Shown here in pieces: positions 14,939 to 35,753 of a DNA stretch of 64,000 nucleotides. The translations under genes and the position numbers were made by a program. Location: positions 62,001 to 126,000 of IMG/VR virus record IMGVR_UViG_3300023184_000026; one strand, given 5' to 3'. The notes beneath the pieces were generated by a model. The model ran no database searches. It worked only from the letters and a program-made list of their open reading frames with translations, and had not been told where the DNA came from. The stretch's first letter is position 1. Each line of letters opens with the position of its first letter.

Positions 14939-15019
14939 AAGTTTGTGTATAATAAATATATATCAAGAGCCATAAAAAGTCCTTGACTTGTTGCTATTTT
15001 TGTTCATAGTATAGCCATT

Positions 15020-16042
15020 ATGAGTGAACGAAAACTAGCTTCTATACAAACCATACTTTCTTTGAGCCCAATAGTTGGTGCTGATGCAATTTTACTTGCA
15101 AAAGTACTTGGATGGGAACTTGTAGTAAAAAAGACAGAATTTCAAGTCGGGGACCGTTGTGTATATTTTGAAATAGACAGTGTTCTTCCTATCGCACAAT
15201 GGAATGACCATCTAAGAAAAGAGCCAAATAAGCCATTGCGTATAAAAACAATACGTTTGAGAGGCGCATTGAGCCAAGGTTTGGCTATGCCGTTGTCTAT
15301 TATTCCAACTGGGGAATATGAAGTGGGGCAAGATGTAACAACACTTGTTGGTGTCACTAAATACGAACCATTTGTTCCAGCACATCTATCTGGCATGGTC
15401 AAGGGCAATTTTCCCACATTTTTACATAAAACCGATGAACCTCGTTTACAATCTGAACCATACGTTCTTGCTGAAGCCATTGACAAAGGGCTTGTGCTTG
15501 TCGGCACACTCAAAATGGATGGTACAAGCTTTACTGCATACCGACGCGATGATGAGTTTGGTGTTTGTTCTCGCAACCTTGACTTAAAGGAAACAGAAGG
15601 TAATGCTCACTGGAAGATGGCTCGCAAGCTTAAACTTGAAGAAATTCTTCGTAGTGAACCTCGCAATCTTTGCATTCAAGGCGAAATGGTTGGTCCGGGT
15701 ATTCAAGGCAATCGTATGGGATTAAAAGAAGTTGATTTATATCTATTCAACTTATTTGACATTGATACTGGCAAATATGCCGGATACAATGAACTTGTTG
15801 AGTTTGGAAAAAAGCACAATATAAAAGTTGTACCGCTTGTTGCACAGAAAGATTTTGGTTTTGGTGAAACAGCCACCGTAAGTAAAATGCTTGAAGTTGC
15901 TTTGGCTCTAAACTATGACAATGGTACACCCGCCGAAGGCATTGTTTGGCGTTCTGCGTGTGAAACTTACAGCGATGTTCTCAAAGGTAGAATGAGTTTC
16001 AAGACCATCAGCAATCGTTTTCTTGAAAAATATAAAGAATGA
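15020..16042 (+). CDS. RNA ligase, DRB0094/Rnl2-like family
   Basis: RKLASIQ N-terminus, KTDEPR, KMDGTS, QGEMVGPGIQGN, EGIV, SFKTIS. Confidence 0.9.
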   Translation: MSERKLASIQTILSLSPIVGADAILLAKVLGWELVVKKTEFQVGDRCVYFEIDSVLPIAQWNDHLRKEPNKPLRIKTIRLRGALSQGLAMPLSIIPTGEYEVGQDVTTLVGVTKYEPFVPAHLSGMVKGNFPTFLHKTDEPRLQSEPYVLAEAIDKGLVLVGTLKMDGTSFTAYRRDDEFGVCSRNLDLKETEGNAHWKMARKLKLEEILRSEPRNLCIQGEMVGPGIQGNRMGLKEVDLYLFNLFDIDTGKYAGYNELVEFGKKHNIKVVPLVAQKDFGFGETATVSKMLEVALALNYDNGTPAEGIVWRSACETYSDVLKGRMSFKTISNRFLEKYKE

Positions 16043-16124
16043 TCTTCAGATAGTATACAAGGCTGTATATACATATATAAAAAGTTTTTTACGATTTGAG
16101 TTGTATATATAATATGTATTTGCG

Positions 16125-16586
16125 ATGAAACTCGCAACATATATTATATTATTATTGGCACCATTCTGTCATGTTTATGGCAGTGATATGGTGCATAGTT
16201 TCAAGAGTTCTTCTTTCAACGGAGCTAACTTTTCTGCATCTGCGATGACAATTGAAAACTTGGCACGCACTCGTAAACAAACAATAAAAGATATTGCAGC
16301 ATCAAAGGCTGAACAAGCAACAGCACAGGCCCAAAACACACCGTTAAACACGTTTATAAACAATTTGCAGGCAAGAATATACTCACAGCTGGCTTCGCAA
16401 GTTACAGACCAGATATTCAATTCTGGTGGAGCAACATTTGGTATAATAAATCTTCAAGGTGGAGCAACTGTTACATGGCAACGCAATGGCGATTTTGCTA
16501 CACTTTTTATAAACGACCCAGCAAGCGGAAGCACAACTCAAATAACCGTTCCAGTCGGTTCATTGACACCGATACCATCAGGATGA
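16125..16586 (+). CDS. csgF: Curli assembly protein CsgF-like
   Basis: Signal peptide; F.SSSFNG; FINNLQARIYSQL; C-terminal TTQITVP; upstream of csgG. Confidence 0.8.
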   Translation: MKLATYIILLLAPFCHVYGSDMVHSFKSSSFNGANFSASAMTIENLARTRKQTIKDIAASKAEQATAQAQNTPLNTFINNLQARIYSQLASQVTDQIFNSGGATFGIINLQGGATVTWQRNGDFATLFINDPASGSTTQITVPVGSLTPIPSG

Positions 16587-17386
16587 AGAAATATGTTATT
16601 TTTGTTCTTTCATTGTTATTGTTGAGTGGCTGCGGTTCTATTCCTCGCAATCCAGCAATCCTCGACGTTCCAAGAACTCAAACTTCTCCCATGGAGAATG
16701 AATTGTTGTCCATTCCACCCGTTGACGGTCCAAGAATAACCATAGGTGTGTATGGATTTGCAGATAAAACAGGAGCAAGAAAAACCGCAGATAATTATGC
16801 ATCATTTTCTTCCGCCGTGACACAGGGTGCAGAAAGTTGGCTCATTGATGCTTTACGACAATCTGGTCGCGGAGCATGGTTTCAAGTATTAGAACGTGCG
16901 AGTTTGGATAATATAATCAAAGAACGACAACTCATTTCACAAACCAGAGAAACATTCCAAGGAAAAAATTCCGAAAAACTAACACCGATGTTATTTGCAG
17001 GTATTCTTGCCGAAGGTGGAATTATTGGATATGATAGCAACATTTTGACTGGTGGCGCAGGTGCCAGTATATTGGGCATATCAGCAAATACTCAATATCG
17101 CAAAGACGTAGTCACAGTATCATTGCGGTTGGTGAGTGTGCATACGGGAGAAATACTTTTGAGCACTGCCGTAACAAAAACAATTTCCAGTGTAGCAGTG
17201 TCGGGAAACTTATTCAAATTCTATGAACATGGAACATTGTCAATAGAATCTGAATTGGGACTGACCGCAAACGAACCCAATACAATTGCGGTCCGCAGTG
17301 CAATAGAAAAAGCCGTGATAGATATCATTTATCAAGGTGAAAAAATGAACCTCTGGAAGTTCAAGAAACAAAACACAACACCATGA
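16583..17386 (+). CDS. csgG: Curli secretion lipoprotein CsgG-like
   Basis: Lipobox LLSGC; VYGFADKTG, SSAVTQGA, WFQVLER, EGGIIGYD, LRLVSV.TGE. Confidence 0.92.
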   Translation: MKKYVIFVLSLLLLSGCGSIPRNPAILDVPRTQTSPMENELLSIPPVDGPRITIGVYGFADKTGARKTADNYASFSSAVTQGAESWLIDALRQSGRGAWFQVLERASLDNIIKERQLISQTRETFQGKNSEKLTPMLFAGILAEGGIIGYDSNILTGGAGASILGISANTQYRKDVVTVSLRLVSVHTGEILLSTAVTKTISSVAVSGNLFKFYEHGTLSIESELGLTANEPNTIAVRSAIEKAVIDIIYQGEKMNLWKFKKQNTTP

Positions 17387-18243
17387 AAATAATAAACATA
17401 ATAAAGTTTACAATAATCACAGCAGTCTTTGGACTTGCTTCGGCCATATATTCCCAAACGCCAGGTGCTCTTGGTGCAATCGCGGGAAACTCGTCTGGCA
17501 ATCAAATATATGTGAATCAAATCACAACCGGAGGAGACACCACGTTCATACAAAATGGAGCATCCAATAGAATTGGATCTTTTGCTCTTCCAAGCAATAT
17601 TACCGGAGATAACATCTTCATGGAATGGAGACAAATTGGAAACTCAAATAGTACTGATTTCTCTATTACAGGAGCCAACACTACGAAATTGTTGTCTGCC
17701 TTTGCGGGAAACAGCAATGAACAGAGAGTTTATTTCAACGGAGCCAATAACAACATGAATTTCAAATTTGATGGTAACACCAACAGACTTTGGATAAATA
17801 ATGATGTTACTGTGTATCGTGACGGTGGAGAAAATACCGCAACAGACAAAGCAACATTGGCAAGTTCTGATTTACAAATTAAATTTGCAGGCAATAATAA
17901 CTTGTTTGCTTATGCCACAACAAACGGTCTCAATAACTATTTGAAGTATGATGTTACTGGTAATACCAACACTATTAAATCTACACAAATTGGCAGTGCT
18001 GGTACCGGAACTCGTCAATCGGGTCACTATCAAGATGTTACCATTCTCGGCGGAGCAAATGATGTTATGATATATCAACAAGGCACCGTTCAACAATACT
18101 TCCAATACAGTCTTATTGGTAGCAATAACACTGTACGTGTTTCACAAACAGCAACTGCCGCTCCAACATTCACAATCAACAACACCAATCAGCTGGCTCC
18201 TCAAGGTCCGGGCAGCGCAACAACCGTCATAGGCAATCCATAA
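17383..18243 (+). CDS. Curlin-like secreted repeat protein
   Basis: Signal peptide; N/G/Q-rich ~22-24 aa repeats (Q.G..N, F.GN.N). Confidence 0.65.
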   Translation: MKIINIIKFTIITAVFGLASAIYSQTPGALGAIAGNSSGNQIYVNQITTGGDTTFIQNGASNRIGSFALPSNITGDNIFMEWRQIGNSNSTDFSITGANTTKLLSAFAGNSNEQRVYFNGANNNMNFKFDGNTNRLWINNDVTVYRDGGENTATDKATLASSDLQIKFAGNNNLFAYATTNGLNNYLKYDVTGNTNTIKSTQIGSAGTGTRQSGHYQDVTILGGANDVMIYQQGTVQQYFQYSLIGSNNTVRVSQTATAAPTFTINNTNQLAPQGPGSATTVIGNP

Positions 18244-18245
18244 TA

Positions 18246-19433
18246 ATGAACAAAATTGTTACATTATTTTTGATGTTCTTTCTATGGAACAATGTTTATG
18301 GCGTTGTGGGTAAATTGACCGAGGTGACTGGTCCTACACAAGTTAGTAGGGCCAGTACCAAATTGGATGGTAAGATTGATGTGGGTATAGAAATAGATGA
18401 TACCATCGAAACTTTAAAATCGCGTGCTGGTATAACATTTGAAGATGGTACCAGAGTACAATGCACCGAGTTTAGCAAACTGGTTATAGATACGTTTGTG
18501 TATGATCCAAGTAGTGGAAAAGGAAAGCTCGCAATGAAAGCAACAATGGGAACGGTAAGATATGCTTCTGGATTGATTGCTAAAAATAATAAAGAAGAAG
18601 TAAAAGTAAAAACTCCCACGGCATCTATATCAGTACGTGGCACGGATTTTTCAATGACAGTTGATGAATTGGGCAGAAGTTTGGTTATTCTTTTACCATC
18701 CCAGCCACAATTTGGACCTTCCGTTGTTGGTCAGATAACAGTCAGCAATGGACTTGGAACAGTTGTATTGACCAAAGCATATCAGGCTACATTTGTAGCA
18801 TCAAGTTCTGTTGTACCATCTTCTCCAGTACTTTTAAATTTTGACGACGAAAGCAAAGTGAATAATATGTTGTTGATTGATACACCGAAAAATGTCACAC
18901 AAGCTGCAAAAGAAGCAAAGAAAGCATCTGTTGGTTCAGAAAAAGAAGATGATGGTGGTGAAGATAAAAATAAAAAGATGGAAAAGAAAGAAACAAAGTC
19001 CGAGAGTAAATCTGCTGCTACATCAGTCTCACAAGTTGAAGAAATTTCAACCGAATCTGCAACCGAAGCAACAAACTTACCTATCGTCGTGGTTCAAGAA
19101 AACATTGTCACAAAGCTTGATATAACTGCTATAAGTCCAAGCACCAATATTGCTGTTATGGATGCAATTGCAGAAAAACAATCTGTGCAACCAACATCAA
19201 TATCAATTATACCAATAGCACCAATTATATCTATACCAACTTCCACAGTAAATAATGGCTTTACAACGAACGGAACTCATGCTATATTGTATATAACCAA
19301 TGGAAATAATGTGGTTTGGTATACTCTAAAGGCTGATGCCAATGCTATATTCAATATAACTCAAAACACTGAATCAAAGGAATATCCATTGAATTTTGGT
19401 TCCAAACTTAAAGTTAATATAATTCAAAAATGA
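18246..19433 (+). CDS. FecR-domain protein
   Basis: Signal peptide; ITFEDGT, GTVRYASG, KTPTASISVRGTDF. Confidence 0.85.
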   Translation: MNKIVTLFLMFFLWNNVYGVVGKLTEVTGPTQVSRASTKLDGKIDVGIEIDDTIETLKSRAGITFEDGTRVQCTEFSKLVIDTFVYDPSSGKGKLAMKATMGTVRYASGLIAKNNKEEVKVKTPTASISVRGTDFSMTVDELGRSLVILLPSQPQFGPSVVGQITVSNGLGTVVLTKAYQATFVASSSVVPSSPVLLNFDDESKVNNMLLIDTPKNVTQAAKEAKKASVGSEKEDDGGEDKNKKMEKKETKSESKSAATSVSQVEEISTESATEATNLPIVVVQENIVTKLDITAISPSTNIAVMDAIAEKQSVQPTSISIIPIAPIISIPTSTVNNGFTTNGTHAILYITNGNNVVWYTLKADANAIFNITQNTESKEYPLNFGSKLKVNIIQK

Positions 19434-21205
19434 AATCTCATATTATTAAACTATTTGGCGTCGGTTTGCTGATATTAACCGCACTTGTTGTGCTACGCAT
19501 ACAAGATTCATATCCAATAGAAGTAATGCGGCTCAAGGGATTGGACTATTATCAACGCACGCAAGACAAAGTAAAAAGTGAAAATATCATTATTGTTGAA
19601 ATCGACGAAAAAAGTTTAGAAGAAAAAGGACAATGGCCGTGGCCAAGAAATGAACTGGCAGATGGTATAAAGAAGGCGTTTGAAAATGAAGCAGCCACTG
19701 TAGTATTGCCAATTATATTTGCAGAAAAAGATAGAATGGGTGGAGACGCAGTATTTGTGGAAATACTGGGAAAATCGCCTGTAATAACCGCACAATCTGC
19801 GGCGGTAAAGGGCAAAGGCGTGCCAGTACCAAGAGGTATGGCGACGATTGGCGGCAGTGCAGATGGATGGTTATATGATTATCCAAATGCAATCGGACCG
19901 ATAAAAGAAATAGGTGAATCGTCTGCTGGTGTGGGAATGTTATTGACGGCACCTGAACTTGATGGCGTGGTACGTCGCTTGCCGTTGGTTGTACAAGTAA
20001 AAAAAGAAACATATCCAACTTTACCTTTGGAAGTGTTGAGAGTGTTTGGAAATGAACCGAGCTATCAAGCAAAAATCAATGAAGCGGGCGTGCAAGCCAT
20101 AAGAGTAAAAGGCTCGGCCCCAATAAATACAGATGCTAGTGGTAGAGTATGGATAAACTTTAAATACAAGTTTGATAATATTTCATATACAGATAAAGAT
20201 TGGAGCAAAGTAAAGGGCAAGATTGTGGTTATAGCATTAACTGCTGAAGGATTAACAAACACAGTGGCAACTCCCGTAGGAACAGCATATGGACACGAAG
20301 TTAGTATGCAGACACTACAAATGTTGGTTGATGGAAATAGACTGGAACGCAAAGCGGAGTTTGATTTGTATGAGTTGGCAGTTGGAACATTGCTTGGATT
20401 GATTCTTGTAACATCCGCCGCATATCTTGGCTATGTTTATAATGGAATATTGGTAAAAGTGTCTGTGTCTGGGTGTATGTTTTTTGGATTTTATTTGTTC
20501 AAAAAGCATGGCTATTTGATTGATTATACTTGGCCGATTGTGGCAGCATTTTTACCGTGGGTTGGTGCAATATTTATGAGATTTGTGATGGAGTTCAAAT
20601 TGAAGATGCAAATCAAGAAGCAGTTTGGAACATATCTTTCTCCAGCACTGGTTGAAAAACTACAAAAAAATCCGGGCTTGCTCAAACTTGGTGGCGAATC
20701 CAAAGAACTAACTATATTATTTTCCGATATAAGAGGATATACTGCGTTGTCTGAGCATTTTGGGAAAGATGTGCAGGGGCTAACATCTCTCATTAACCGT
20801 TATATGGATGTTATGTTGCCTATAGTAATGAAAAATGAAGGCACTGTTGGAAAACTTATAGGGGACGCTGTAATGGCGTGGTGGTCGGCACCTATTCATG
20901 TAAAAGACCAAGCAACACTTGCAATAAAAGCCGCGCAGGAAATGAATATCGCATTGGTAAAACTCAACGAAGAATCAAAAGCACAAGGAATCCCAACTCT
21001 ATCAATCGGAATCGGAATAAATACAGGAGAAGTTGTTGTGGGAAATATGGGGTCAACGGAGCGATTTAGTTATGATATACTTGGTGACGCAGTGAATCTA
21101 GCGTCTCGCATAGAGGGTCAAACTAAAGAATATGGCGTGTTGATTATTTTGGGAGAAAATACTGTAAAAAAATACAAAAAAGAACAAGAAAATATGAAAA
21201 AATGA
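19430..21205 (+). CDS. CHASE2 + class III adenylate/guanylate cyclase, N-terminal part
   Basis: GQWPWPR, DGVVRR (CHASE2); TM helices; LFSDIRGYT, KLIGDAVM, GINTG, GDAVNLASRIEG. Confidence 0.92.
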   Translation: MKSHIIKLFGVGLLILTALVVLRIQDSYPIEVMRLKGLDYYQRTQDKVKSENIIIVEIDEKSLEEKGQWPWPRNELADGIKKAFENEAATVVLPIIFAEKDRMGGDAVFVEILGKSPVITAQSAAVKGKGVPVPRGMATIGGSADGWLYDYPNAIGPIKEIGESSAGVGMLLTAPELDGVVRRLPLVVQVKKETYPTLPLEVLRVFGNEPSYQAKINEAGVQAIRVKGSAPINTDASGRVWINFKYKFDNISYTDKDWSKVKGKIVVIALTAEGLTNTVATPVGTAYGHEVSMQTLQMLVDGNRLERKAEFDLYELAVGTLLGLILVTSAAYLGYVYNGILVKVSVSGCMFFGFYLFKKHGYLIDYTWPIVAAFLPWVGAIFMRFVMEFKLKMQIKKQFGTYLSPALVEKLQKNPGLLKLGGESKELTILFSDIRGYTALSEHFGKDVQGLTSLINRYMDVMLPIVMKNEGTVGKLIGDAVMAWWSAPIHVKDQATLAIKAAQEMNIALVKLNEESKAQGIPTLSIGIGINTGEVVVGNMGSTERFSYDILGDAVNLASRIEGQTKEYGVLIILGENTVKKYKKEQENMKK

Positions 21206-22005
21206 TAAGCGATATGCTATATATTGGAGATACACAAATAATTTTAAACATGAGAAAAATAACAAACGGTGAAGCCGTGGAAAGAATATCAAAAAAACAT
21301 CCACATTTGGATTGCTCGCAGGTTAAATACAATGGAGCATTTGAAAAAATTGTGGTGAGATGTACTATTCACGATCACACATTTGAAACTCCATACAAAT
21401 ACATTGTTAGTAAGCGAAGCAAGACCGGTTGTATATATTGCCAACGAGACTCTTACAGATTAAATAACGAAACCGTCATTTTCCGTTTCATAAAGACACA
21501 TGGTAAAAAATATGATTACAATAAAGTGCAATATAAAAGTAATTTGAAAAAAGTTGAAATAGTATGTCCAAAACATGGAAGTTTCATGCAGGAACCAGCA
21601 AACCATTGGAACGGACACGGGTGCATGCGATGTGCTGTGGAGAATGGTCGTCACGGAGTTGGTGGATACACCGAAGAAACTCTGAAAGAAAGCAATGAAA
21701 CTGGCGTCGTGTATGTGCTGAAAATAAAAGACTGCAAAATTTACTACAAAATAGGAATATCAAAATTTGGCGGAGACAAAAGAATAAAAGACATATCTTA
21801 TTCCGATAAAGCCGAAGTTTTATATGAGTCAAAAAGAATATTGCTAAAAGACGCATTCAGAATTGAACAAGAAATGCTATCTCAGCATAACCGATATAGG
21901 CATTCCCATAAGAAAATATCCGGATGGACGGAGATAATAGACGAACGACCAAATATCAAATTGTTAGAAAAAAAGATAAACTCCATAAACTATGCAACTA
22001 TTTGA
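21202..22005 (+). mobile_element. Free-standing homing-endonuclease-like gene (Zn-finger repeats + GIY-YIG-like C-terminus) inserted in cyclase gene
   Basis: C.IH...GCIYC and CPKHGSF...H.NGHGC..C repeats; VYVL...YYKIGIS...IEQ; likely start at ATG 21250. Confidence 0.75.
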
Positions 22006-22297
22006 ACTTGATTGTATCGCCGTCAAAGGTAAAAAAGATGGCGCGAGAATTTATACCGTTCTTGAAAATAAATTGAGTGAAAACCAATATAACACAGTTG
22101 TATCTGGTCATTTTGCTTTTCTAAATGATTACAGAATGCAAAGATGGGATGGTGCAATATCTCATGCCAATGAACTCATGACGCAGAATAAAGAAATGAA
22201 GAAGTATTATGAAATGATGATTGAAAGAATATTGGAACTTCGTAACAGCAATCTTGACAAAGATTGGGACGGAGTTTTTAGAGCAACCTCCAAGTAA
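21992..22297 (+). CDS. C-terminal fragment of the CHASE2 cyclase
   Basis: ELDCIAVKGK...IYTV and WDGVFRATSK, the usual C-terminal continuation of CHASE2 cyclases. Confidence 0.85.
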   Translation: MQLFELDCIAVKGKKDGARIYTVLENKLSENQYNTVVSGHFAFLNDYRMQRWDGAISHANELMTQNKEMKKYYEMMIERILELRNSNLDKDWDGVFRATSK

Positions 22298-22319
22298 AAT
22301 TTTATTATAAAACATAATT

Positions 22320-22763
22320 ATGAAATATATGAAAACAAAACTACTATTAGCAATACTTCCGTTGGTGCTATTAACTTCATGTGCCAACTCTCAAGGCGAT
22401 GTGTTTGGACGCAAAGCAGATGCTGGTGCCATTATTGGTGGCATGGCTGGAACCGTGATTGGTGCTTACAACGGCAATGCTATCAAGGGTGCATTGATTG
22501 GTGCTGGCGTTGGGTTGGGTGCTGGTGCCATTGCAGATGCTAATGATGCTCGCCAAACTCAAAATGGACCAATGATATATCGCGAACAGCCTGTTCAACA
22601 AACAGAAGTTGTTGTGGTTCAACAACCAATTGTGATAGAAGAGCGTGTATGGGTCGGTCCAGACCTATGGGTATACTCATATCATGGCTATAGGCACAAT
22701 GGCAGAATATATTATCGTGGACCCCACGTACCATTTCATCGTCGCCCTGCTTTTAGACGCTAA
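22320..22763 (+). CDS. Glycine-zipper lipoprotein
   Basis: Lipobox LLTSC; GAIIGGMAG..IG...GALIGAGVG. Confidence 0.75.
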   Translation: MKYMKTKLLLAILPLVLLTSCANSQGDVFGRKADAGAIIGGMAGTVIGAYNGNAIKGALIGAGVGLGAGAIADANDARQTQNGPMIYREQPVQQTEVVVVQQPIVIEERVWVGPDLWVYSYHGYRHNGRIYYRGPHVPFHRRPAFRR

Positions 22764-22818
22764 AAAGTAGTTATAATAAGATATTTGCAAAAAATATCAC
22801 TTTTTTAGAAAAAAGTGT

Positions 22819-22847
22819 TTGACTTTTCATTTTTTCTTCATCATAGT
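22819..22847 (+). promoter_or_regulatory. Sigma70-like promoter of leader peptide
   Basis: TTGACT-17 bp-CATAGT. Confidence 0.65.
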
Positions 22848-22867
22848 TCTATTTATCAATAACAAAC

Positions 22868-22981
22868 ATGAACTCGTATTCACACAAATCCCAAAACCTC
22901 GCCACTTCGTGGAGTTTGTGCTTTATTACACAACCTACACGTGGAGCCAATAAAGGCGATACAAAGCAGGGTGTGGCATAA
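22868..22981 (+). CDS. Putative attenuator leader peptide (37 aa)
   Basis: MNSYSHKSQNLATSWSLCFITQPTRGANKGDTKQGVA*, between promoter and terminator. Confidence 0.6.
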   Translation: MNSYSHKSQNLATSWSLCFITQPTRGANKGDTKQGVA

Positions 22982-23019
22982 TAGGAGTTAAAGTTTAATA
23001 ACTTTACAAAACCTAAAAA

Positions 23020-23049
23020 GCCCACCCTCCAAAAGAGAGTGGGTTTTTT
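23020..23049 (+). terminator. Attenuator terminator
   Basis: GCCCACCCTC-CAAAA-GAGAGTGGGT followed by T-tract; 5' arm can alternatively pair with 22968-22977. Confidence 0.7.
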
Positions 23050-23086
23050 GTTTTTGGAGTTTTTAGAAAAAGGTTAGAAAAAAAGA

Positions 23087-23150
23087 TTGACAAAATAAAA
23101 AAAGTAAGTAGAGTAAGAAGTATCAAATTTAAGTTAGGTTCTTTTAACAA
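23087..23150 (+). promoter_or_regulatory. Second promoter plus boxA-like site
   Basis: TTGACA-16-TAGAGT; GTTCTTTTAACAA at 23138-23150. Confidence 0.5.
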
Positions 23151-23498
23151 TTCAAATTTTTAGGTTAGGTTAGATGGGTAAAAACGCACCTGTAAGCGCG
23201 ATAAAATAGCCACCGGACCATTTAGGTACCGTTTTGTGGGAATCAATATCATTATGTAGGTTAGAGATAGGTTAGATGAAAACATAATGTGAGGCCGAAG
23301 TATATAATGTTATTTATAAAGTTGAAGAAAGAAGCAACAAGACATGTATTTAGCGTGTTGAGTTTCTTTCTTCATATGTTCTGCGTAATATACAACCTCC
23401 TCGTGGTGCAGAACGGGACAAAATAAAAAAATATTTTGTGCGAATAGTATAGTTAAAAGAGTTTTTATAGATATTTATTACTAACATTCAAAAAAAAT

Positions 23499-23816
23499 AT
23501 GGAAGATAAAGATATACTCGTTGAGTTTTTAAGAGGCGGATGGATTGTTGCTCTAATTGGAGCACTGGGTATGTTGGCAAGAACTTTCATGGATGGTGTA
23601 AAACGGTCTTGCACAGAACAAATCAAACGAATCATAGCAGCAGCAATATGTTCAACAATAGCATGGTTTATTTTAGAACAAGTAGAAGTAAGTAGCTTAA
23701 CAAAAGCAATCAGTTATGGCATAACTGGTGTGATAAGTCCGGAAATTCTTCAAGGTATAACAGTATTATCAAAGAAGTTTGCTAAAAAACCAGAAGATTT
23801 CTTAAAGAAAAAATAA
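23499..23816 (+). CDS. Small membrane protein (holin-like)
   Basis: 105 aa, three hydrophobic segments, basic C-terminus. Confidence 0.55.
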   Translation: MEDKDILVEFLRGGWIVALIGALGMLARTFMDGVKRSCTEQIKRIIAAAICSTIAWFILEQVEVSSLTKAISYGITGVISPEILQGITVLSKKFAKKPEDFLKKK

Positions 23817-23821
23817 TTTTT

Positions 23822-23897
23822 GCGGTAGTATCTCAGTTGGTAGAGAACGAGTTTTCCAAACTTGATGTCGCAGGTTCGATCCCTGTCTGCCGCTCCA
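23822..23897 (+). tRNA. tRNA-Gly(TCC)
   Basis: Cloverleaf, loop TTTCCAA, encoded CCA. Confidence 0.93.
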
Positions 23898-23954
23898 TTT
23901 GCAAACGCCACGTCATTGGCGAAATTGAGGTTGACTCAAATGACAATTTTAAAT

Positions 23955-24041
23955 GGGCAAGCGCCAAAGTTGGAGAGTTGGAGCAGACTGTAAATCTGTT
24001 GCCGTAAGGCTGAGTTGGTTCGAATCCGACCTTGCCCACCA
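23955..24041 (+). tRNA. tRNA-Tyr(GTA)
   Basis: Loop CTGTAAA, long variable arm, CCA. Confidence 0.93.
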
Positions 24042-24052
24042 TTTTAGAATAC

Positions 24053-24140
24053 GGAAAATTGGCAGAGTGGTCTAACGCAGGACTTTGCTAAAGTCCCGAT
24101 CCGAAAGGGTCCATAGGTTCGAATCCTATATTTTCCGCCA
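24053..24140 (+). tRNA. tRNA-Ser(GCT)
   Basis: Loop TTGCTAA, long variable arm, G73, CCA. Confidence 0.93.
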
Positions 24141-24151
24141 AATTTATATAC

Positions 24152-24226
24152 GCCGAATAAACATAAATGGTAATGTGCTAGTCTTGTAAATTAGATAAGC
24201 GGGTTCGATTCCCGCATTTGGCTCCA
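24152..24226 (+). tRNA. tRNA-Thr(TGT)
   Basis: Loop CTTGTAA, CCA. Confidence 0.88.
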
Positions 24227-24234
24227 CTTTATAT

Positions 24235-24310
24235 GCAGTAGTAGTTCAATGGTAGAATGCTTCGTTGCCAACGAAGAGGTCTGCGGGTTCAAGTCCCGCC
24301 TACTGCACCA
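24235..24310 (+). tRNA. tRNA-Gly(GCC)
   Basis: Loop TTGCCAA, CCA. Confidence 0.9.
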
Positions 24311-24320
24311 ATTTTTAAAT

Positions 24321-24396
24321 GCCGCGTGACATAGCTGGTTGTGATGACCCCTCTGCAAAAGGGAGGAGATTGGTTCGATTCCAATACGCGGTTCCA
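24321..24396 (+). tRNA. tRNA-Cys(GCA)
   Basis: Loop CTGCAAA, U73, CCA. Confidence 0.88.
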
Positions 24397-24399
24397 TTT

Positions 24400-24503
24400 T
24401 GTTGTGTAGCTCAGAGGTAGACCACTGACGGGATATGATGGTAAAAGACACCGAAAAAGTTCCCTATAAGCAGATGCCGATGGTTCGAATCCATCCATAA
24501 CAA
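24400..24503 (+). ncRNA. tRNA-like RNA with expanded anticodon arm
   Basis: Acceptor TGTTGTG/CATAACA, D arm, T arm GATGG-TTCGAAT-CCATC; extended insert replaces anticodon loop; no CCA. Confidence 0.6.
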
Positions 24504-24513
24504 ATAATTTTAT

Positions 24514-24591
24514 GGGCGTGTGACGTAACTGGATAACCGTGTTTCATTCAAAATGAAAATTCTGTGGGTTCGAGTCCCATCATGCCCACCA
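24514..24591 (+). tRNA. tRNA-Leu(CAA), short variable loop
   Basis: Stem TTTCA/TGAAA, loop TTCAAAA, 5-nt variable loop, A73, CCA. Confidence 0.75.
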
Positions 24592-24723
24592 ATTTTGATA
24601 GTGTATGTGTTTTCGTCTCTAAAATCTTACGGCACATGGAAGACGTGTAACGGGTTCAAAGTCCGACCACTTTGCATTGAGTAGAGTGAGTAAGCCAACC
24701 ATATACATTATCAAAATATTTTT

Positions 24724-24797
24724 GGACGATTGGTGAAAAAGTATCACTGCTGACTGAAGATCAATAATTCCGGTTGCAAGATCCGGGTCGTCCACCA
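24724..24797 (+). tRNA. tRNA-Phe(GAA), atypical T arm
   Basis: Loop CTGAAGA, acceptor GGACGAT/GTCGTCC, CCA. Confidence 0.75.
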
Positions 24798-24798
24798 T

Positions 24799-25128
24799 TT
24801 ATTTAAAATCAAATTCTTTTTTATATTCTAACACTGATGTTATATATGGGACGCTACCATCATCCTCGAATTGTCTGTATGTAAAATCTATTATAAAGTT
24901 TCCAACTTGAACAACTGTGTGTGGTAGTTTGTAAACTATATGTTTAACATCTACGGTCTTTGCTTGTGGAAATCCATTATTATTTAAGAAATCTGCCAGT
25001 GAATCTGATATTTCACAACACATTCCTTTTGACCACGTTGGTGCATGAATAATATTATAATAATCCTCCCCATCGGACTGTAACCAAGAAGTGCAAAGTT
25101 CATTTAAAAGTATTTCTGTTAGTTTCAT
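24799..25128 (-). CDS. Hypothetical protein
   Basis: 109-aa ORF, N-terminus MKLTEILLNE; GMC...H...D motif order suggests a papain/transglutaminase-like fold (inference). Confidence 0.6.
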   Translation of the reverse strand: MKLTEILLNELCTSWLQSDGEDYYNIIHAPTWSKGMCCEISDSLADFLNNNGFPQAKTVDVKHIVYKLPHTVVQVGNFIIDFTYRQFEDDGSVPYITSVLEYKKEFDFK

Positions 25129-25223
25129 AACATATACATATCCTAAATGTTATTTAATATCAAAAAGAAATATTTGAAAGTATCGGCGGCAATACATTTA
25201 AACTACCCGAAACACCATTTTAT

Positions 25224-25297
25224 TGAGATATATTGTAGTGGCAGCAAAAGAGTCTCTGAAACTCATAGCATTGGTTCGATTCCAATTATCTCATCCA
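25224..25297 (+). tRNA. tRNA-Gln(CTG)
   Basis: U1-A72, loop CTCTGAA, CCA. Confidence 0.85.
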
Positions 25298-25462
25298 TTT
25301 TATTATACAACAACTGCGGAGATAGTAATTCCAAAAAAGTTGTTACTGTATGAGTAGAAGATATCGTGAGTTAATTACTATGTCACGTGAAGCGAAAAAT
25401 ATAGGATAATATAAAGGTGAAGCCTCATCTTGAATGGGTTAAATTCCCAAAGGCATTTTTAC

Positions 25463-25538
25463 TGTCCCATAGCTCAGTTGGCAGAGCAAGAAACTGTTAA
25501 TTTCAAGGTCGCACGTTCGAGCCGTGCTGGGACAGCCA
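25463..25538 (+). tRNA. tRNA-Asn(GTT)
   Basis: Loop CTGTTAA, G73, CCA. Confidence 0.92.
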
Positions 25539-25544
25539 ATTTAT

Positions 25545-25617
25545 TGTGATGTAGTGTCAAAGTAGCACGGGCTCTGTTAAAGCTCTTGTCGTGGTGCGAG
25601 TCCACGCTTCACAGCCA
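25545..25617 (+). tRNA. tRNA-Asn(GTT), divergent second copy
   Basis: Loop CTGTTAA, T loop TGCGAGT, G73, CCA. Confidence 0.8.
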
Positions 25618-25623
25618 TTTTAC

Positions 25624-25698
25624 GGATCGCAAGCATATAAAGTGATGCTCTAGGCTCTTAACCTTGAGAACACGGGGCAGTACCGTGGCGGTCCACCA
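25624..25698 (+). tRNA. tRNA-Lys(CTT)
   Basis: Loop CTCTTAA, atypical T loop GGCAGTA, CCA. Confidence 0.8.
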
Positions 25699-25791
25699 AT
25701 TTCAAGCAAGAAGAGGCTGTTAAAGTCAGCATGGACATTACAAGATGCTAAATGGTGATAAGTGAATTCACATCTTACTTGAAAAATTTAT

Positions 25792-25870
25792 GGAACTAAA
25801 GCCACAGTGGACGGGCAGCGGTCTTTTAAACCGTTAATTCGTGTGGGTTCAACTCCCACTGGTTCCACCA
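25792..25870 (+). tRNA. tRNA-Lys(TTT)
   Basis: Loop CTTTTAA, CCA. Confidence 0.88.
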
Positions 25871-25876
25871 TTTTAT

Positions 25877-25959
25877 AGCAGAGACAAGCCAAGGGACGCT
25901 AACTGCGCTCATAACGCAGCCGAAAGGTATGATGTGTTCGATTCACATCTCTGCTTCCA
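25877..25959 (+). tRNA. tRNA with CAT anticodon and long variable arm
   Basis: CTGCG-CTCATAA-CGCAG; variable arm CCGAAAGG; acceptor AGCAGAG/CTCTGCT; CCA. Confidence 0.7.
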
Positions 25960-25966
25960 TTTTTAT

Positions 25967-26042
25967 CAGTGTGTGGTGCCAAAGGTTGGCGATTCCGCTT
26001 GGAACGGAAATTATGTAGGTTCGAGTCCTATCACACTGACCA
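25967..26042 (+). tRNA. tRNA-Pro(TGG)
   Basis: C1-G72, loop CTTGGAA, CCA. Confidence 0.87.
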
Positions 26043-26047
26043 TTTAT

Positions 26048-26124
26048 GCTTGTGTAGCTCAACTGGATAGAGCAACAGATTACGAATCTGTAGGTTGAAG
26101 GCTCGAATCCTTCCACATGCACCA
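26048..26124 (+). tRNA. tRNA-Arg(ACG)
   Basis: Loop TTACGAA, CCA. Confidence 0.9.
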
Positions 26125-26127
26125 TTT

Positions 26128-26224
26128 TGAACAGAAGCCTAGTTGTTCGTAAAACAGGAGTCGGTGTAATCATATTGATGTTTTTCAACAGGTAACCGTG
26201 CGCGGAATAATCGGGTGCTGTTCA
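26128..26224 (+). ncRNA. 97-nt structured element, copy 1
   Basis: Closed by TGAACAG/CTGTTCA; 3 differences from copy at 27079. Confidence 0.65.
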
Positions 26225-26230
26225 TTTTTT

Positions 26231-26305
26231 GGCCCTATAGAATAGAAGTTAGTTCGCCTGACTTTCAATCAGGAGATGTGGGAGCGTTACCCACTGGGGC
26301 TACCA
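26231..26305 (+). tRNA. tRNA-Glu(TTC)
   Basis: Loop CTTTCAA, atypical T loop AGCGTTA, CCA. Confidence 0.85.
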
Positions 26306-26308
26306 TTT

Positions 26309-26464
26309 TTGAGCGGCAGCGTGGAAGGACATGCAGCCTTGAGAAGTTCTATTACGCGCAGTATAGTGTACATAAAGCTGTGCCTCTGAAACGAAGCGAT
26401 GACTACCTAATAGATCGGGTCAGATTCAATGTCATCAATAGGTATCAATTCCTATCCGACTCAA
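26309..26464 (+). ncRNA. tRNA-like RNA with large central insert
   Basis: TTGAGCGG/CCGACTCAA ends, D-like GCGTGGAAGGACATGC, T-like ATAGG-TATCAATT-CCTAT. Confidence 0.5.
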
Positions 26465-26731
26465 ATTAATTTTGAATAGCAGCTCGGAGTGTAGGAAAGT
26501 TTTTTCCTTTCCGGTACGAGCATGGGGTCTAACCATCAGCGGAAAAATAAGCAACGAAAAGCCTCTGGGTTCATAACAATATGTTAAATGGAAAAATAAT
26601 AACATGTTGGAATTTATGCGTAAATAAGAAACTCGCTATAGTGTAGCTATATAAAGCAAAACTACACCTATTCAATTAATTTTATGAGTTATAATAAAGT
26701 TTTGATATAATATATATAGTATATATTATAT

Positions 26732-26974
26732 ATGAACATATCACCAATACAATCATCGGCTGAAACAAATAGTTCACCAGTAAACATTCAAGCTGCGGCT
26801 AAAATATATAGTAAAAATAGTCCAGTATCACTTAGTACAAATGCATCTGGATTTTTTGCAAATGCTGAAGCTGATGTTGTGCATGATCTTAAAAAAGCTT
26901 TGATGGCTGCAATAAATTGTGGAGATTTTGACAAAGCTATACATATTTTAAAATGTTTAAAAGAACTGGGATAA
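26732..26974 (+). CDS. Hypothetical protein
   Basis: 80-aa ATG ORF in tRNA array. Confidence 0.55.
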   Translation: MNISPIQSSAETNSSPVNIQAAAKIYSKNSPVSLSTNASGFFANAEADVVHDLKKALMAAINCGDFDKAIHILKCLKELG

Positions 26975-27078
26975 TAATATATAAACAATTTACAGAGAGT
27001 TAAGGGCACTGCTACCAGAATATCGTGGTAGGTTCACGTAGCGTAATAACCACACATGGCTAAACACTCTCTAATATT

Positions 27079-27175
27079 TGAACAGAAGTCTAGTTGTTTG
27101 TAAAACAGGAGTCGGTGTAATCATATTGATGTTTTTCAACAGGCAACCGTGCGCGGAATAATCGGGTGCTGTTCA
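27079..27175 (+). ncRNA. 97-nt structured element, copy 2
   Basis: Near-identical direct repeat of 26128-26224. Confidence 0.65.
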
Positions 27176-27179
27176 TTTT

Positions 27180-27253
27180 TGGGATATGGTGTAATGGTAA
27201 CACAGACGACTTTGACTCGTCTATTCATGGTTCGAGTCCATGTATCCCAGCCA
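27180..27253 (+). tRNA. tRNA-Gln(TTG)
   Basis: U1-A72, loop CTTTGAC, G73, CCA. Confidence 0.92.
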
Positions 27254-27314
27254 TTATATAGTTGATGGGTTATATATACTCTTCATTTTTGTGTATTAGT
27301 ATATTTATAAAAGT

Positions 27315-27515: not shown

Positions 27516-27518
27516 TAT

Positions 27519-27596
27519 GGTAGAGAAGCACAAGTAGTTATATGCTCTCGTTTGATAGACGAAGGATAGTGAGTGCAAGTCTCACCTCTACCACCA
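27519..27596 (+). tRNA. tRNA-Ile(GAT)
   Basis: Loop TTGATAG, T loop TGCAAGT, CCA. Confidence 0.8.
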
Positions 27597-27887: not shown

Positions 27888-27893
27888 TTTTAT

Positions 27894-28991: not shown

Positions 28992-28999
28992 ATTTTTAT

Positions 29000-35096: not shown

Positions 35097-35753
35097 ATGG
35101 CAAAAAAGAGCAAAGTTAAACCAACTGATATAATAAATAGTCCTTTGTTTGCTGGAGTGCCGCCAAAATTTGTAAAAAAAGCGGCTACTTTTTGTGAAGT
35201 AAAAGAGTATAGTGCTGGTTCATTTATAATAAATGAAGGTGAAAAAGGAGACTTTATGTTTATTATACTTGATGGTCAAGTGGATGTATTAAAAGGACCA
35301 AAGAAGATGAAATTAGCCACACTTGGCAAAGGTGTATTTTTGGGAGAAGGTGCATTGGTTAGTAGATCACCAAGAAATGCAAGTATTGTCGCAAAGAGTA
35401 GTGTTAAACTTGCTGTATTTGATCAAAATGGATTTGATAAATTATCTGTTATGCATCCATGTATTCCTGTAACAATGATGAATATACACAACGAAAGATG
35501 CAAAGATACAGTGCGTAAACTCAATATATTAAAATCAAAAGAATTTATATTGATGGCAGCAGTTGGATTGGTGTTGCTTGTAAAAAATTCACATAGTATA
35601 CTTCCAATGAATTTACATGATATTGCAGATCAAATTGCAAGCTATATTCCAGATCAAGTTATGGCATTGGGTGGCCCAGCAGCAGCAGCAATTGGATTGA
35701 AATTAAAACAAATGGAAATGGGTGATATAGTTTCTAAATTAGACAAGATTTGA
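35097..35753 (+). CDS. Cyclic-nucleotide-binding protein with C-terminal hydrophobic segments
   Basis: EGEKGD.MFIILDGQV, FLGEGALV..PRNASIVA phosphate-binding cassette. Confidence 0.85.
   Translation: MAKKSKVKPTDIINSPLFAGVPPKFVKKAATFCEVKEYSAGSFIINEGEKGDFMFIILDGQVDVLKGPKKMKLATLGKGVFLGEGALVSRSPRNASIVAKSSVKLAVFDQNGFDKLSVMHPCIPVTMMNIHNERCKDTVRKLNILKSKEFILMAAVGLVLLVKNSHSILPMNLHDIADQIASYIPDQVMALGGPAAAAIGLKLKQMEMGDIVSKLDKI

What the first reader, a model, noticed from the sequence alone, without database searches (positions are those of the whole stretch)
16125..22297. Phage-borne curli export + FecR + CHASE2 cyclase operon
Seen: tightly coupled csgF-csgG-curlin-like-FecR-CHASE2 cyclase genes with export signals. 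Established: CsgG/F export amyloid curlin; FecR and CHASE2 domains sense periplasmic signals; csgF/G occur in some marine phages. Inference: a trans-envelope unit linking a surface amyloid-like protein to cyclic-nucleotide synthesis in the infected cell, e.g. aggregation, superinfection exclusion or sensing of surface contact. No csgE was recognised.
Basis: partly seen in the sequence, partly recalled or inferred. Interest (0 to 1): 0.7.

Follow-up and report, generated by a model that had tools for sequence, protein, structure and literature searches.

The report
Phage curli module with split cyclase
A giant freshwater phage carries the already-published phage gene cluster for curli-type secretion plus a FecR-domain protein and an adenylate cyclase; the new feature is that a selfish endonuclease gene has cut its cyclase gene in two, yet selection still keeps both halves.

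Summary
The same order is kept in 44 of 44 related viral loci with enough flank.

The module is not new. Pelagibacter phage HTVC008M and the Melnitz phages carry it. PMC9599517 (2022) described phage T8SS genes with FecR and adenylate cyclase, their alphaproteobacterial origin, their expression, and the same functional ideas. This window adds a member from a 297-kb freshwater T4-like phage.

- Relatives show three states at this site: intact, split with the endonuclease gene, and split without it.
- All split forms, plus intact forms 5-6 residues longer, make one clade.
- Both pieces and the endonuclease gene are under purifying selection.

The closest bacterial cyclases lack curli neighbours. 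They often sit beside giant adhesins with an N-terminal FecR domain. The phage FecR domain is predicted to resemble anti-sigma signalling domains and the RTX-adhesin periplasmic plug.

Trans-envelope signalling remains an inference: the one complex prediction gave no answer.

The parts
16125..16586 (+). csgF homologue (153 aa) with a hydrophobic N-terminus
   Evidence: Pfam CsgF, E 2.8e-13, covering profile positions 6-132 of 132. PHROG 35372. Its stop overlaps the csgG start as ATGA.
16583..17386 (+). csgG homologue (267 aa), an outer-membrane pore lipoprotein
   Evidence: Pfam CsgG, E 3.3e-50. Matches E. coli CsgG (3x2r, 4uv3) at E 2e-44 over residues 6-262. Lipobox LLSGC. The Phe of the constriction loop is kept.
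17383..18243 (+). Curlin-repeat protein (286 aa), the only one in this phage genome
   Evidence: Signal-like N-terminus. G-x-x-N is invariant about every 22-27 residues. The family profile matches PDB 8c50 'Curlin associated repeat-containing protein' at E 1.7e-9. 6 of 24 family members pass Pfam Curlin_rpt; this one does not. The AF2 model is made of paired short strands, pTM 0.69. It is the single hit in the whole genome.
18246..19433 (+). Secreted FecR-domain protein (395 aa): folded N-domain, disordered linker of about 100 aa, small C-terminal beta module
   Evidence: Pfam FecR, E 9.9e-10. Model: residues 22-200 at pLDDT about 90, 230-336 below 50, 339-394 about 80. VIA-align: Z 15.3 to the PupR CCSSD (residues 49-209) and Z 10.7 to 5ix9 (residues 18-112). 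Conservation pattern.
19430..21205 (+). CHASE2 receptor adenylate cyclase, N-terminal piece (591 aa): TM, CHASE2, three hydrophobic segments, most of the catalytic domain
   Evidence: CHASE2 E 8.6e-42. Guanylate_cyc E 1.1e-18, but only profile positions 6-146 of 183. Hydropathy. Invariant D433, K475, D479 and R560. Best solved matches are bacterial adenylate cyclases 2w01, 3r5g and 1wc0.
21194..21989 (+). Insertion of about 790 nt relative to intact alleles. It replaces about 7 nt (GCTAAAA) and supplies the stop codon of the N piece
   Evidence: DNA alignment with L047, L005 and L050. Junction sequences. RNA-library contigs at 99% identity cover 21706-22037.
21202..22005 (+). Free-standing homing-endonuclease-like gene (267 aa)
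   Evidence: DUF723 at 30 bits (cut-off 20.9) and T5orf172 at 20.0 bits (cut-off 20). PHROG 681 'endonuclease', E 3.4e-37. dN/dS 0.06-0.10 against copies in L084 and L166.
21992..22297 (+). Cyclase C-terminal piece (101 aa): last catalytic strands with the invariant VKGK motif, plus a helical tail
   Evidence: Aligns with the last 100 or so residues of intact Melnitz and L047 cyclases. VKGK is invariant in the family. dN/dS 0.12-0.23 among split lineages.
22320..22763 (+). Glycine-zipper lipoprotein gene directly downstream. Membership of the module is not shown
   Evidence: Gly-zipper families match below their cut-offs. Lipobox LLTSC. Present downstream only in the closer relatives.
35097..35753 (+). 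The only cyclic-nucleotide-binding-domain protein of the phage (218 aa), a candidate reader of the cyclase output; specific to this clade
   Evidence: PF00027, E 1.2e-16; it is the single hit in the genome. One hydrophobic segment at 144-169 and no HTH domain found. On the same contigs as the module in 5 relatives. Absent from Melnitz, HTVC008M and 3 large IMG/VR records.

Best explanation
This is the phage type VIII (curli-type) secretion cluster with FecR and adenylate cyclase that is already known from marine pelagiphages. Here it sits in a freshwater T4-like giant phage.

Shown:
- The cluster encodes a CsgG pore lipoprotein, a CsgF partner, one secreted curlin-repeat subunit, a secreted FecR-domain protein and a CHASE2 membrane adenylate cyclase.
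- The genes are translationally coupled and always occur in this order.
- The cyclase gene was cut inside its catalytic domain by a free-standing endonuclease gene.
- The two cyclase pieces and the endonuclease gene have all stayed under purifying selection.
- Related phages show the intact state, the split state with the endonuclease gene, and the split state without it.

Inferred:
- In an infected diderm host, CsgG and CsgF form an outer-membrane channel.
- The curlin-like subunit is exported through it and polymerises on the surface.
- The FecR-domain protein is the periplasmic partner of the CHASE2 domain. The pair comes from Alphaproteobacteria, where the FecR domain heads giant secreted adhesins.
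- This pair couples envelope or secretion status to cAMP synthesis.
- The N piece and the C piece associate after coupled translation to rebuild the catalytic fold, as in other phage genes split by endonuclease genes.
- The benefit to the phage is not established. Surface masking against superinfection and aggregation are the published guesses.
For: Identity.

Coupling and topology.

Synteny: 44 of 44 viral loci with at least 4.8 kb upstream keep the order; 8 of them have a second curlin gene. The same order occurs in HTVC008M and Melnitz.

Prior description and expression in marine phages: PMC9599517.

Split gene:
- Alignment to intact cyclases.
- Insertion boundaries.
- Independent assemblies with the same split: L084/L085 and L166/L167. 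Split without the endonuclease gene: L081-83 and L168/169.
- Among split lineages dN/dS is 0.06-0.09 for the N piece, 0.12-0.23 for the C piece and 0.06-0.10 for the endonuclease gene. Between the window and L084, the endonuclease dS of 1.15 is close to the flank dS of 1.09.
- All 18 split forms and all 4 forms of 691/692 aa make one clade with SH-aLRT 100.

FecR/CHASE2 pairing:
- 27 of 80 closest bacterial cyclase loci have a FecR-domain ORF within 10 kb. In nine loci it ends within about 100 nt of the cyclase start on the same strand. Pfam scans of six of these ORFs showed cadherin-like, Ig-like, RTX or serralysin-C domains in three of the four large ones.
- Published FecR/CHASE2 operons: PMC5192318 and PMC5498481.

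FecR N-domain fold.
Against: - No experiment exists for any step in this phage.
- The complex prediction gave no support for FecR-CHASE2 contact. The score stayed high (0.72) when CHASE2 was replaced.
- The window's own curlin-like protein fails Pfam Curlin_rpt, and Foldseek found no significant structural match.
- There is no CsgE gate, so the pore could serve another purpose.
- PMC9599517 reports that FecR and the cyclase are not always present in phage curli regions, so the cyclase is not indispensable to the secretion part.
- The RNA evidence is unstranded contigs, partly from relatives about 91% identical, and DNA carry-over is not excluded.
- Activity of a two-piece class III cyclase has not been demonstrated here.
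- The host is unknown.
Confidence: 0.6

Rival explanations
1. Pore-only reading. CsgG and CsgF act as an ungated outer-membrane channel, used for lysis timing (pinholin or secretin-like, Buchholz 2022) or for import of cofactors (PMC9599517). Fibre formation is irrelevant or absent.
For: No CsgE anywhere in the genome. Buchholz et al. saw no clumping of Melnitz-infected cells and proposed a lysis role. PMC9599517 lists import as an option.
Against: A secreted curlin-repeat protein is present in 44 of 44 loci, directly after csgG with an overlapping start. Its family matches a solved curli subunit. CsgF is also always kept, although Zaragoza-Solas et al. note it is not needed for CsgG assembly. 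The module lies among replication genes, not next to a recognised lysis cassette.
Confidence: 0.15
2. Two functions inherited as one block. The FecR-CHASE2 cyclase pair is a separate envelope-sensing or cAMP-reprogramming unit. It travels with the T8SS genes but does not sense them.
For: None of the 80 closest bacterial cyclase loci has CsgF, CsgG or curlin neighbours, whereas FecR partners are common. PMC9599517 states that FecR and the cyclase are not part of bacterial curli operons and are not always present in phage curli regions. The complex job gave no support for FecR-CHASE2 contact, and no measured link to the T8SS parts exists.
Against: The order is invariant, and the FecR gene lies between the curlin gene(s) and the cyclase in all 44 loci across phages that share only 38-45% cyclase identity. 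Stop/start overlaps join the two halves of the cluster.
Confidence: 0.15
3. Decay. The endonuclease insertion inactivated the cyclase, and this phage carries a dead remnant.
For: The break lies inside the catalytic domain. The N piece lacks about 20% of the Pfam profile, including the invariant VKGK motif.
Against: Both pieces keep open frames in at least five diverged lineages. Their dN/dS is as low as in intact genes: C piece 0.12-0.23 against 0.16-0.24. Split forms without the endonuclease gene keep an ATGA-coupled junction in two sequence variants. About a dozen 90%-identity clusters of the 591/593-aa piece exist in metagenomes.
Confidence: 0.1

Closest known systems
Pelagiphage T8SS/curli cluster with FecR and adenylate cyclase (HTVC008M, Melnitz, uncultivated pelagimyophages and podophages; PMC7029224, PMC9004378, PMC9599517)
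   Same: Same genes in the same order, csgF-csgG-curlin-FecR-(curlin)-cyclase. CsgG is 48-50% and the cyclase about 41-43% identical. There is no CsgE. The closest cellular relatives are alphaproteobacterial.
   Different: This one is in a freshwater 297-kb phage whose closest cultured DNA polymerase is only 42.5% identical. Zaragoza-Solas et al. reported that the freshwater pelagimyophages they studied lack the operon. It has a single curlin gene and no histidine kinase upstream. Its cyclase is split by an endonuclease gene. Its clade also has a CNB-domain protein.
E. coli / Salmonella curli system (csgBAC-csgDEFG)
   Same: CsgG lipoprotein pore and CsgF with full-length homology, plus a secreted Q/N/G-rich repeat subunit.
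   Different: No CsgE, CsgC or CsgD, and only one subunit gene in place of the CsgA/CsgB pair. Constriction residues are only partly kept. FecR and the cyclase are additions.
Bacterial FecR-domain protein plus CHASE2 sensor pairs (Burkholderia LysM-FecR with CHASE2 histidine kinase, PMC5192318; S. meliloti CHASE2 cyclases CyaD1/CyaD2 and the FecR-domain protein SMc02177, PMC5498481)
   Same: A secreted FecR-domain protein is encoded next to, or functionally near, a sensor with the TM-CHASE2-3TM layout.
   Different: Outputs and partner tails differ. In the closest alphaproteobacterial loci the FecR domain heads giant adhesin-like proteins with cadherin, RTX or similar domains. In the phage it heads a 395-aa protein inside a T8SS cluster. 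What CHASE2 senses is unknown in every case.
N-terminal retention ('plug') module of T1SS RTX adhesins (MpIBP RIN, PDB 5IX9; LapA)
   Same: Residues 18-112 of the predicted FecR protein superpose on 73 of the 76 residues of 5IX9 (Z 10.7, 2.2 A). A long flexible segment follows, as in LapA.
   Different: This is predicted structure only, at 20% identity. The phage protein has a Sec-type signal and no RTX/T1SS signal. The nearby pore is CsgG, not TolC-like. No LapG/LapD was found.
Genes in pieces made by free-standing homing endonucleases in T4-like phages (for example nrdA split by mobE in Aeromonas phage Aeh1; recalled from memory, not checked here)
   Same: An endonuclease ORF sits inside a conserved gene. 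The flanking pieces are kept as separate coupled ORFs. No intron or intein is involved.
   Different: The target is an auxiliary signalling enzyme (a class III cyclase), not a replication or nucleotide-metabolism gene. Alleles that lost the endonuclease gene again, both split and re-fused, are seen side by side.

Membership tests
CsgG (T8SS outer-membrane pore) | Sequence match above the curated cut-off over the full domain | tested here: met
   PF03783 at 170.8 bits against a cut-off of 20.8. E 2e-44 to E. coli CsgG over residues 6-262.
CsgG (T8SS outer-membrane pore) | Lipoprotein signal with lipobox Cys | tested here: met
   MKKYVIFVLSLLLLSGC aligns with the E. coli LLSGC.
CsgG (T8SS outer-membrane pore) | Constriction loop residues (Tyr/Asn/Phe in E. 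coli) | tested here: inconclusive
   The Phe is kept. The Asn position is Ser, and the Tyr is shifted within a loop one residue longer.
CsgF | Sequence match above the curated cut-off over the whole profile | tested here: met
   PF10614 at 50.6 bits against a cut-off of 25.8, profile positions 6-132 of 132.
Curlin subunit (CsgA/CsgB) | Curlin_rpt repeats above the Pfam cut-off in this protein | tested here: not met
   No PF07012 match even at E 10. 6 of 24 family members pass.
Curlin subunit (CsgA/CsgB) | Homology of the family to a solved curli subunit, in repeat register | tested here: met
   Profile A6 against 8c50_A: E 1.7e-9, three stretches.
Curlin subunit (CsgA/CsgB) | Beta-solenoid fold | tested here: inconclusive
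   The AF2 model is a run of paired 7-residue strands, pTM 0.69. Foldseek gives mainly beta-helix proteins but at E above 0.02 and TM below 0.4.
Curlin subunit (CsgA/CsgB) | CsgG-dependent export and amyloid formation | not testable with these tools
   Needs expression with Congo red or ThT staining and fractionation.
Canonical curli system | CsgE periplasmic gate present | tested here: not met
   PF10627 is absent from the 297-kb genome, while the E. coli control is found.
FecR-type anti-sigma factor | Periplasmic FecR / cell-surface-signalling domain | tested here: met
   PF04773 at 39.2 bits against a cut-off of 24. Z 15.3 to the PupR CCSSD.
FecR-type anti-sigma factor | N-terminal cytoplasmic anti-sigma domain and a membrane-spanning segment before the periplasmic domain | tested here: not met
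   The domain starts about 20 residues after a signal-like N-terminus, leaving no room for a cytoplasmic domain. It therefore shares a domain with FecR but is not a FecR regulator, and an iron role cannot be inferred.
CHASE2 sensor | CHASE2 domain between one N-terminal TM and three following hydrophobic segments | tested here: met
   PF05226 at 143.9 bits. Hydrophobic windows at 4-22 and across 313-387.
Class III adenylate cyclase | Complete catalytic domain in one polypeptide | tested here: not met
   The N piece covers profile positions 6-146 of 183. The rest lies on ORF 21992-22297.
Class III adenylate cyclase | Catalytic residues: two metal-binding Asp, a substrate Lys, Arg, and the VKGK motif | tested here: met
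   D433, K475, D479 and R560 are invariant on the N piece, and VKGK is invariant on the C piece. The best solved matches are adenylate cyclases. The roles are assigned from general knowledge of the family.
Class III adenylate cyclase | cAMP synthesis | not testable with these tools
   Needs an enzyme assay or complementation of a cya-deficient strain.
Free-standing homing endonuclease | Nuclease-family ORF present in some alleles and absent from the same site in close relatives | tested here: met
   PHROG 681, E 3.4e-37. Present in the window, L084/85 and L166/167. Absent at the same site in L047 (95% identical), L081 and L168.
Free-standing homing endonuclease | Cleavage of the endonuclease-free allele and homing | not testable with these tools
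   Needs a cleavage assay. The only hint is a recombination breakpoint near the junction: the C piece is closer to L050 (dS 0.076) than to L047 (dS 0.27).
Group I intron or intein | Ribozyme structure around the ORF, or an in-frame protein insertion | tested here: not met
   No intron family was found in 15000-24000 at E up to 1. The ORFs overlap by 4 and 14 nt, leaving no room for a ribozyme. Separate stop and start codons are present.

The most novel reading that the evidence does not exclude
The FecR-domain protein may be a pore-threaded tether.
- Its N-terminal domain, which resembles both an anti-sigma signalling domain and the RTX-adhesin plug, would stay in the periplasm.
- The disordered linker of about 100 residues would pass through the CsgG channel.
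- The small C-terminal module would sit at the surface with the fibre.
- The CHASE2 cyclase would read the state of the plug.
Channel occupancy or pull on the surface structure would then be turned into cAMP. The same outside-in logic would apply to the alphaproteobacterial giant adhesins with FecR heads that are encoded beside the closest cyclases.

This reading rests on predicted architecture, bacterial neighbourhoods and an unscored lead from the complex job. The test for curlin homology of the C-module was negative. The direction of threading through CsgG is unknown.
Probability: 0.15. Interest if true: 0.75.

Novelty: new member of a known kind. Interest (0 to 1): 0.4.

Why it matters
The module itself extends a published marine phage feature to freshwater giant phages. 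This shows that the curli-FecR-cyclase cluster is spread more widely than pelagiphages.

Two points add value.
- The split cyclase is a natural experiment. Intact, split-with-endonuclease, split-without and apparently re-fused alleles coexist. A class III cyclase that works from two polypeptides, and the gain-and-loss cycle of a homing endonuclease, can therefore be tested with existing sequences.
- Nobody knows what CHASE2 domains sense. The FecR domain recurs as the partner of CHASE2 sensors, sits at the head of secreted adhesins, and is predicted to resemble a pore-plug domain. Together these give a concrete, testable candidate signal: the periplasmic end of a surface-tethered protein.

Tried and rejected
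- Group I intron or intein as the cause of the interruption. Rfam found none and the ORFs overlap.
- Assembly artefact. Rejected because four other assemblies have the same split, and near-identical RNA-library contigs cover the right junction.
- Sigma-70 promoter and terminator scan. Counts were at chance level and gave no information.
- T4 late-promoter motif TATAAATA. None lies upstream of csgF.
- Foldseek on the curlin-like model. Nothing was significant.
- Curlin homology of the FecR C-terminal module. hhalign probability was 1.7%, no better than a reversed control, so the idea was dropped.
- Three-chain complex prediction (CHASE2, curlin-like, FecR). The verdict was 'no answer'.
- A bacterial origin of the whole five-gene cluster. 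0 of 80 closest cyclase loci have CsgF, CsgG or curlin neighbours.
- The CNB-domain protein as a general module part. It is absent from five other module-bearing phage records.
- The searches with the cyclase and the FecR protein against 5.8 billion proteins. The listed hits were only phage-clade relatives, which was useful for finding the split forms but not for finding cellular homologues.
- Host identification was not attempted beyond the polymerase comparison.


Full report
SETTING. The window is bases 62001-126000 of a 297,258-bp virus record that CheckV rates complete. Its GC content is 34-42%. It has a T4-type DNA polymerase (PHROG 262, E 6e-176) and clamp loader just upstream of the finding. 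The closest cultured polymerase is that of Microcystis phage Mel-JY01, at only 42.5% identity. Related contigs come from freshwater and lake metagenomes.

OBSERVATION. Between 16125 and 22297 there are seven + strand ORFs.
- CsgG starts at 16583 with a lipobox and matches E. coli CsgG over its full length at E 2e-44.
- Stop/start overlaps (ATGA) link csgF/csgG, csgG/curlin and FecR/cyclase. Hydropathy fits export signals and the usual CHASE2 membrane layout.

THE CURLIN-LIKE PROTEIN. The window's own protein does not match Pfam Curlin_rpt. It aligns with the annotated curlin-repeat proteins of Melnitz at 25-26% identity. In a 22-24-member family alignment, G-x-x-N recurs invariantly about every 22-27 residues. 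Six of 24 members pass Curlin_rpt on their own. The family profile matches the solved curli subunit 8c50 at E 1.7e-9. The AF2 model (pLDDT 72.7, pTM 0.69) is a run of paired short strands. Foldseek returned mainly beta-helix proteins, none significant. I therefore file it as a divergent curlin-family protein. Export and amyloid formation are untested. It is the only such gene in the phage, and there is no CsgE.

CONSERVATION AND PRIOR KNOWLEDGE. The same gene order is annotated in Pelagibacter phage HTVC008M and the four Melnitz phages. A scan of IMG/VR with the cyclase gave 77 loci. In all 44 with at least 4.8 kb upstream, profile searches find CsgF-CsgG-curlin-FecR-cyclase in that order, and 8 of them have a second curlin gene before the cyclase.

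The literature already covers this.
- Zaragoza-Solas et al. 2020 reported the curli cluster in pelagimyophages.
- Buchholz et al. 2022 discussed CsgGF in Melnitz as a possible lysis-timing pore.
- PMC9599517 (2022) explicitly described FecR and adenylate cyclase inside phage T8SS clusters. It covered the alphaproteobacterial affinity of CsgG, CsgF, FecR and the cyclase, transfer between phage families, expression in marine metatranscriptomes, and the hypotheses of superinfection defence, sibling capture and import.
That paper never mentions CHASE2 and reads FecR as an iron regulator. Zaragoza-Solas et al. noted that their freshwater pelagimyophages lack the operon, so a freshwater giant-phage clade with it is an extension of range, not a new kind.

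THE SPLIT CYCLASE.
- The 591-aa ORF stops after position 146 of the 183-position catalytic profile.
- The next ORF (21202-22005) carries DUF723 and T5orf172 and matches PHROG 681 'endonuclease' at E 3.4e-37.
- The 101-aa ORF that follows aligns with the last 100 or so residues of intact cyclases, including the invariant VKGK motif.
- Against relatives that are 95% identical (L047, L005), about 790 nt (about 21194-21989) replace 7 nt. The insert brings the stop codon for the N piece. The C piece starts at a Met already present in the intact protein.
- There is no intron: Rfam finds none, and the ORFs overlap by 4 and 14 nt.

The 77 IMG/VR loci all have a continuous cyclase. The large protein collection, however, holds about a dozen clusters of 591/593-aa pieces. 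Their contexts show the same split with an endonuclease gene that is 79-88% identical (L084/85, L166/167). They also show the split without any endonuclease gene, where the junction is one base shorter than the intact allele and the stop and start overlap, in two sequence variants (L081-83, L168/169).

Selection is purifying everywhere among the split lineages. dN/dS is 0.06-0.09 for the N piece, 0.12-0.23 for the C piece (against 0.16-0.24 between intact genes) and 0.06-0.10 for the endonuclease gene. The synonymous divergence of the endonuclease gene matches that of its flanks, for example 1.15 against 1.09 between the window and L084.

On a tree of 126 cyclases, all 18 split forms and all 4 intact forms of 691/692 aa make one clade (SH-aLRT 100), nested among 686-aa intact forms. 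The longer intact forms lie at two places among the split ones. The simplest reading is one old insertion followed by repeated loss of the endonuclease gene. Some losses left a coupled two-ORF gene, and some re-fused the frame with a 5-6-residue scar. The alternative is a longer junction that arose first and was then invaded three times. It needs as many steps and is not excluded, but it fits the co-divergence of the endonuclease gene with its flanks less well.

The window's C piece is closer to L050 (dS 0.076) than to L047 (0.27), whereas the N piece shows the reverse (0.42 against 0.18). This indicates recombination near the junction.

THE FecR-CHASE2 PAIR. The 80 closest cellular cyclases (30-37% identical over the full length) are almost all alphaproteobacterial. 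With profiles built from the viral proteins, none of these loci has CsgF, CsgG or curlin neighbours. In 27 there is a FecR-domain ORF within 10 kb. In nine loci, including seven labelled Bradyrhizobium, it ends within about 100 nt of the cyclase start on the same strand. Of six such ORFs scanned with Pfam, four were large (656-2106 aa), and three of those carried cadherin-like, Ig-like, RTX or serralysin-C-type domains behind the N-terminal FecR domain.

FecR-domain proteins next to CHASE2 sensors are documented for Burkholderia kinases. In S. meliloti, CHASE2 cyclases act upstream of the cAMP regulator Clr, one of whose targets is a FecR-domain protein.

The phage FecR protein has no cytoplasmic anti-sigma part, so it is not a FecR regulator and an iron role cannot be inferred from the name. 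Its model has three parts: a confident N-domain, a disordered linker of about 100 residues, and a five-strand C-module that ends in an invariant I-x-Q. The N-domain superposes on the PupR cell-surface-signalling domain (Z 15.3). Residues 18-112 superpose on 5IX9 (Z 10.7, 73 of 76 residues). 5IX9 is the periplasmic plug that retains the RTX adhesin MpIBP in its outer-membrane pore, and it was the template used to model LapA's retention module.

This suggests the tether model given as the novel case, but support for it is thin. The C-module shows no detectable homology to the curlin family. The three-chain complex prediction returned 'no answer': the FecR score was 0.65, fell to 0.00-0.02 with unrelated partners, but was 0.72 when CHASE2 was replaced. 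It gives no support for FecR-CHASE2 contact and is not used as evidence.

OUTPUT SIDE. The catalytic residues fit an adenylate cyclase, and the best solved matches are bacterial adenylate cyclases. The phage genome has exactly one cyclase and one cyclic-nucleotide-binding-domain protein. The latter lies at window 35097-35753, inside the tRNA island. It has an intact-looking phosphate-binding cassette, one hydrophobic segment and no detected DNA-binding domain. It travels with the module in the close clade. It is absent from five more distant module-bearing phage records, so it is at most a clade-specific reader of the signal.

EXPRESSION. Four lake metatranscriptome libraries hold contigs 90-99% identical to parts of 16135-19933. 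Two contigs of 1.1-1.2 kb, about 91% identical, run from csgG through the curlin gene into the FecR gene. Near-identical contigs cover the endonuclease/C-piece junction. These contigs are unstranded and DNA carry-over is not excluded, so this is consistent with expression but does not prove it.

VERDICT. The module is a new member of a known kind. The split cyclase with its gain-and-loss states, and the structural link between the FecR head and adhesin plug domains, are the parts worth follow-up.

Noticed in passing
window 35097-35753: This is the only cyclic-nucleotide-binding-domain protein of the phage (218 aa, PF00027 E 1.2e-16). It has a hydrophobic segment at 144-169 and no HTH domain. 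It lies 13 kb downstream of the only cyclase. It is found on the same contigs as the module in close relatives but not in distant module-bearing phages.
   Followed up: partly
window 23822-38280 and 45795-46185: A tRNA island of 30 genes lies directly downstream of the module, followed by a tmRNA gene (tag peptide AKRNLAKVSFLSVRKNSGAETLVAA). Melnitz also carries a tmRNA a few kb from its curli genes.
   Followed up: no
window 23378-23452: A weak match to the HDV-like ribozyme family RF02682 covers the full model (33.4 bits against a gathering score of 44, E 0.003). It lies about 370 nt upstream of the first tRNA.
   Followed up: no
window 22320-22763: A glycine-zipper lipoprotein gene (lipobox LLTSC) lies right after the cyclase C piece. 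It is conserved in that position only in the closer relatives (for example 96% in L006 and L050).
   Followed up: partly
window 21992-22297 compared with L050 and L047: There is a recombination mosaic at the insertion site. The C piece is nearly identical at synonymous sites to L050 (dS 0.076), while the N piece is closest to L047 (dS 0.18 against 0.42 to L050). This is what co-conversion during homing would leave.
   Followed up: partly
L105:4757-9877, L126:3479-9796, L100:18040-20985 (bacterial loci): Giant adhesin-like proteins with an N-terminal FecR domain and cadherin-like, Ig-like or RTX domains are encoded beside the closest bacterial CHASE2 cyclases. L105 and L126 (Bradyrhizobium) lie directly upstream of the cyclase on the same strand. 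L100 (an uncultured alphaproteobacterium) lies about 6 kb away on the opposite strand. This association may say what CHASE2 senses.
   Followed up: partly
window 15020-16042 and 48641-49756: There are two RNA-ligase-type genes. One (PHA02142 OB-fold plus RNA_ligase) lies directly upstream of csgF and is conserved there in close relatives. The other matches PHROG 562, 'RNA ligase and tail fiber protein attachment catalyst'.
   Followed up: no
window 34606-35043: A small P-loop kinase-like ORF (APS_kinase, E 4.8e-14) lies immediately upstream of the CNB-domain gene.
   Followed up: no
L065, L068, L069: In some distant loci csgF lies about 2 kb away from csgG with other genes between them, so the csgF-csgG adjacency is not absolute although the order is kept.
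   Followed up: no
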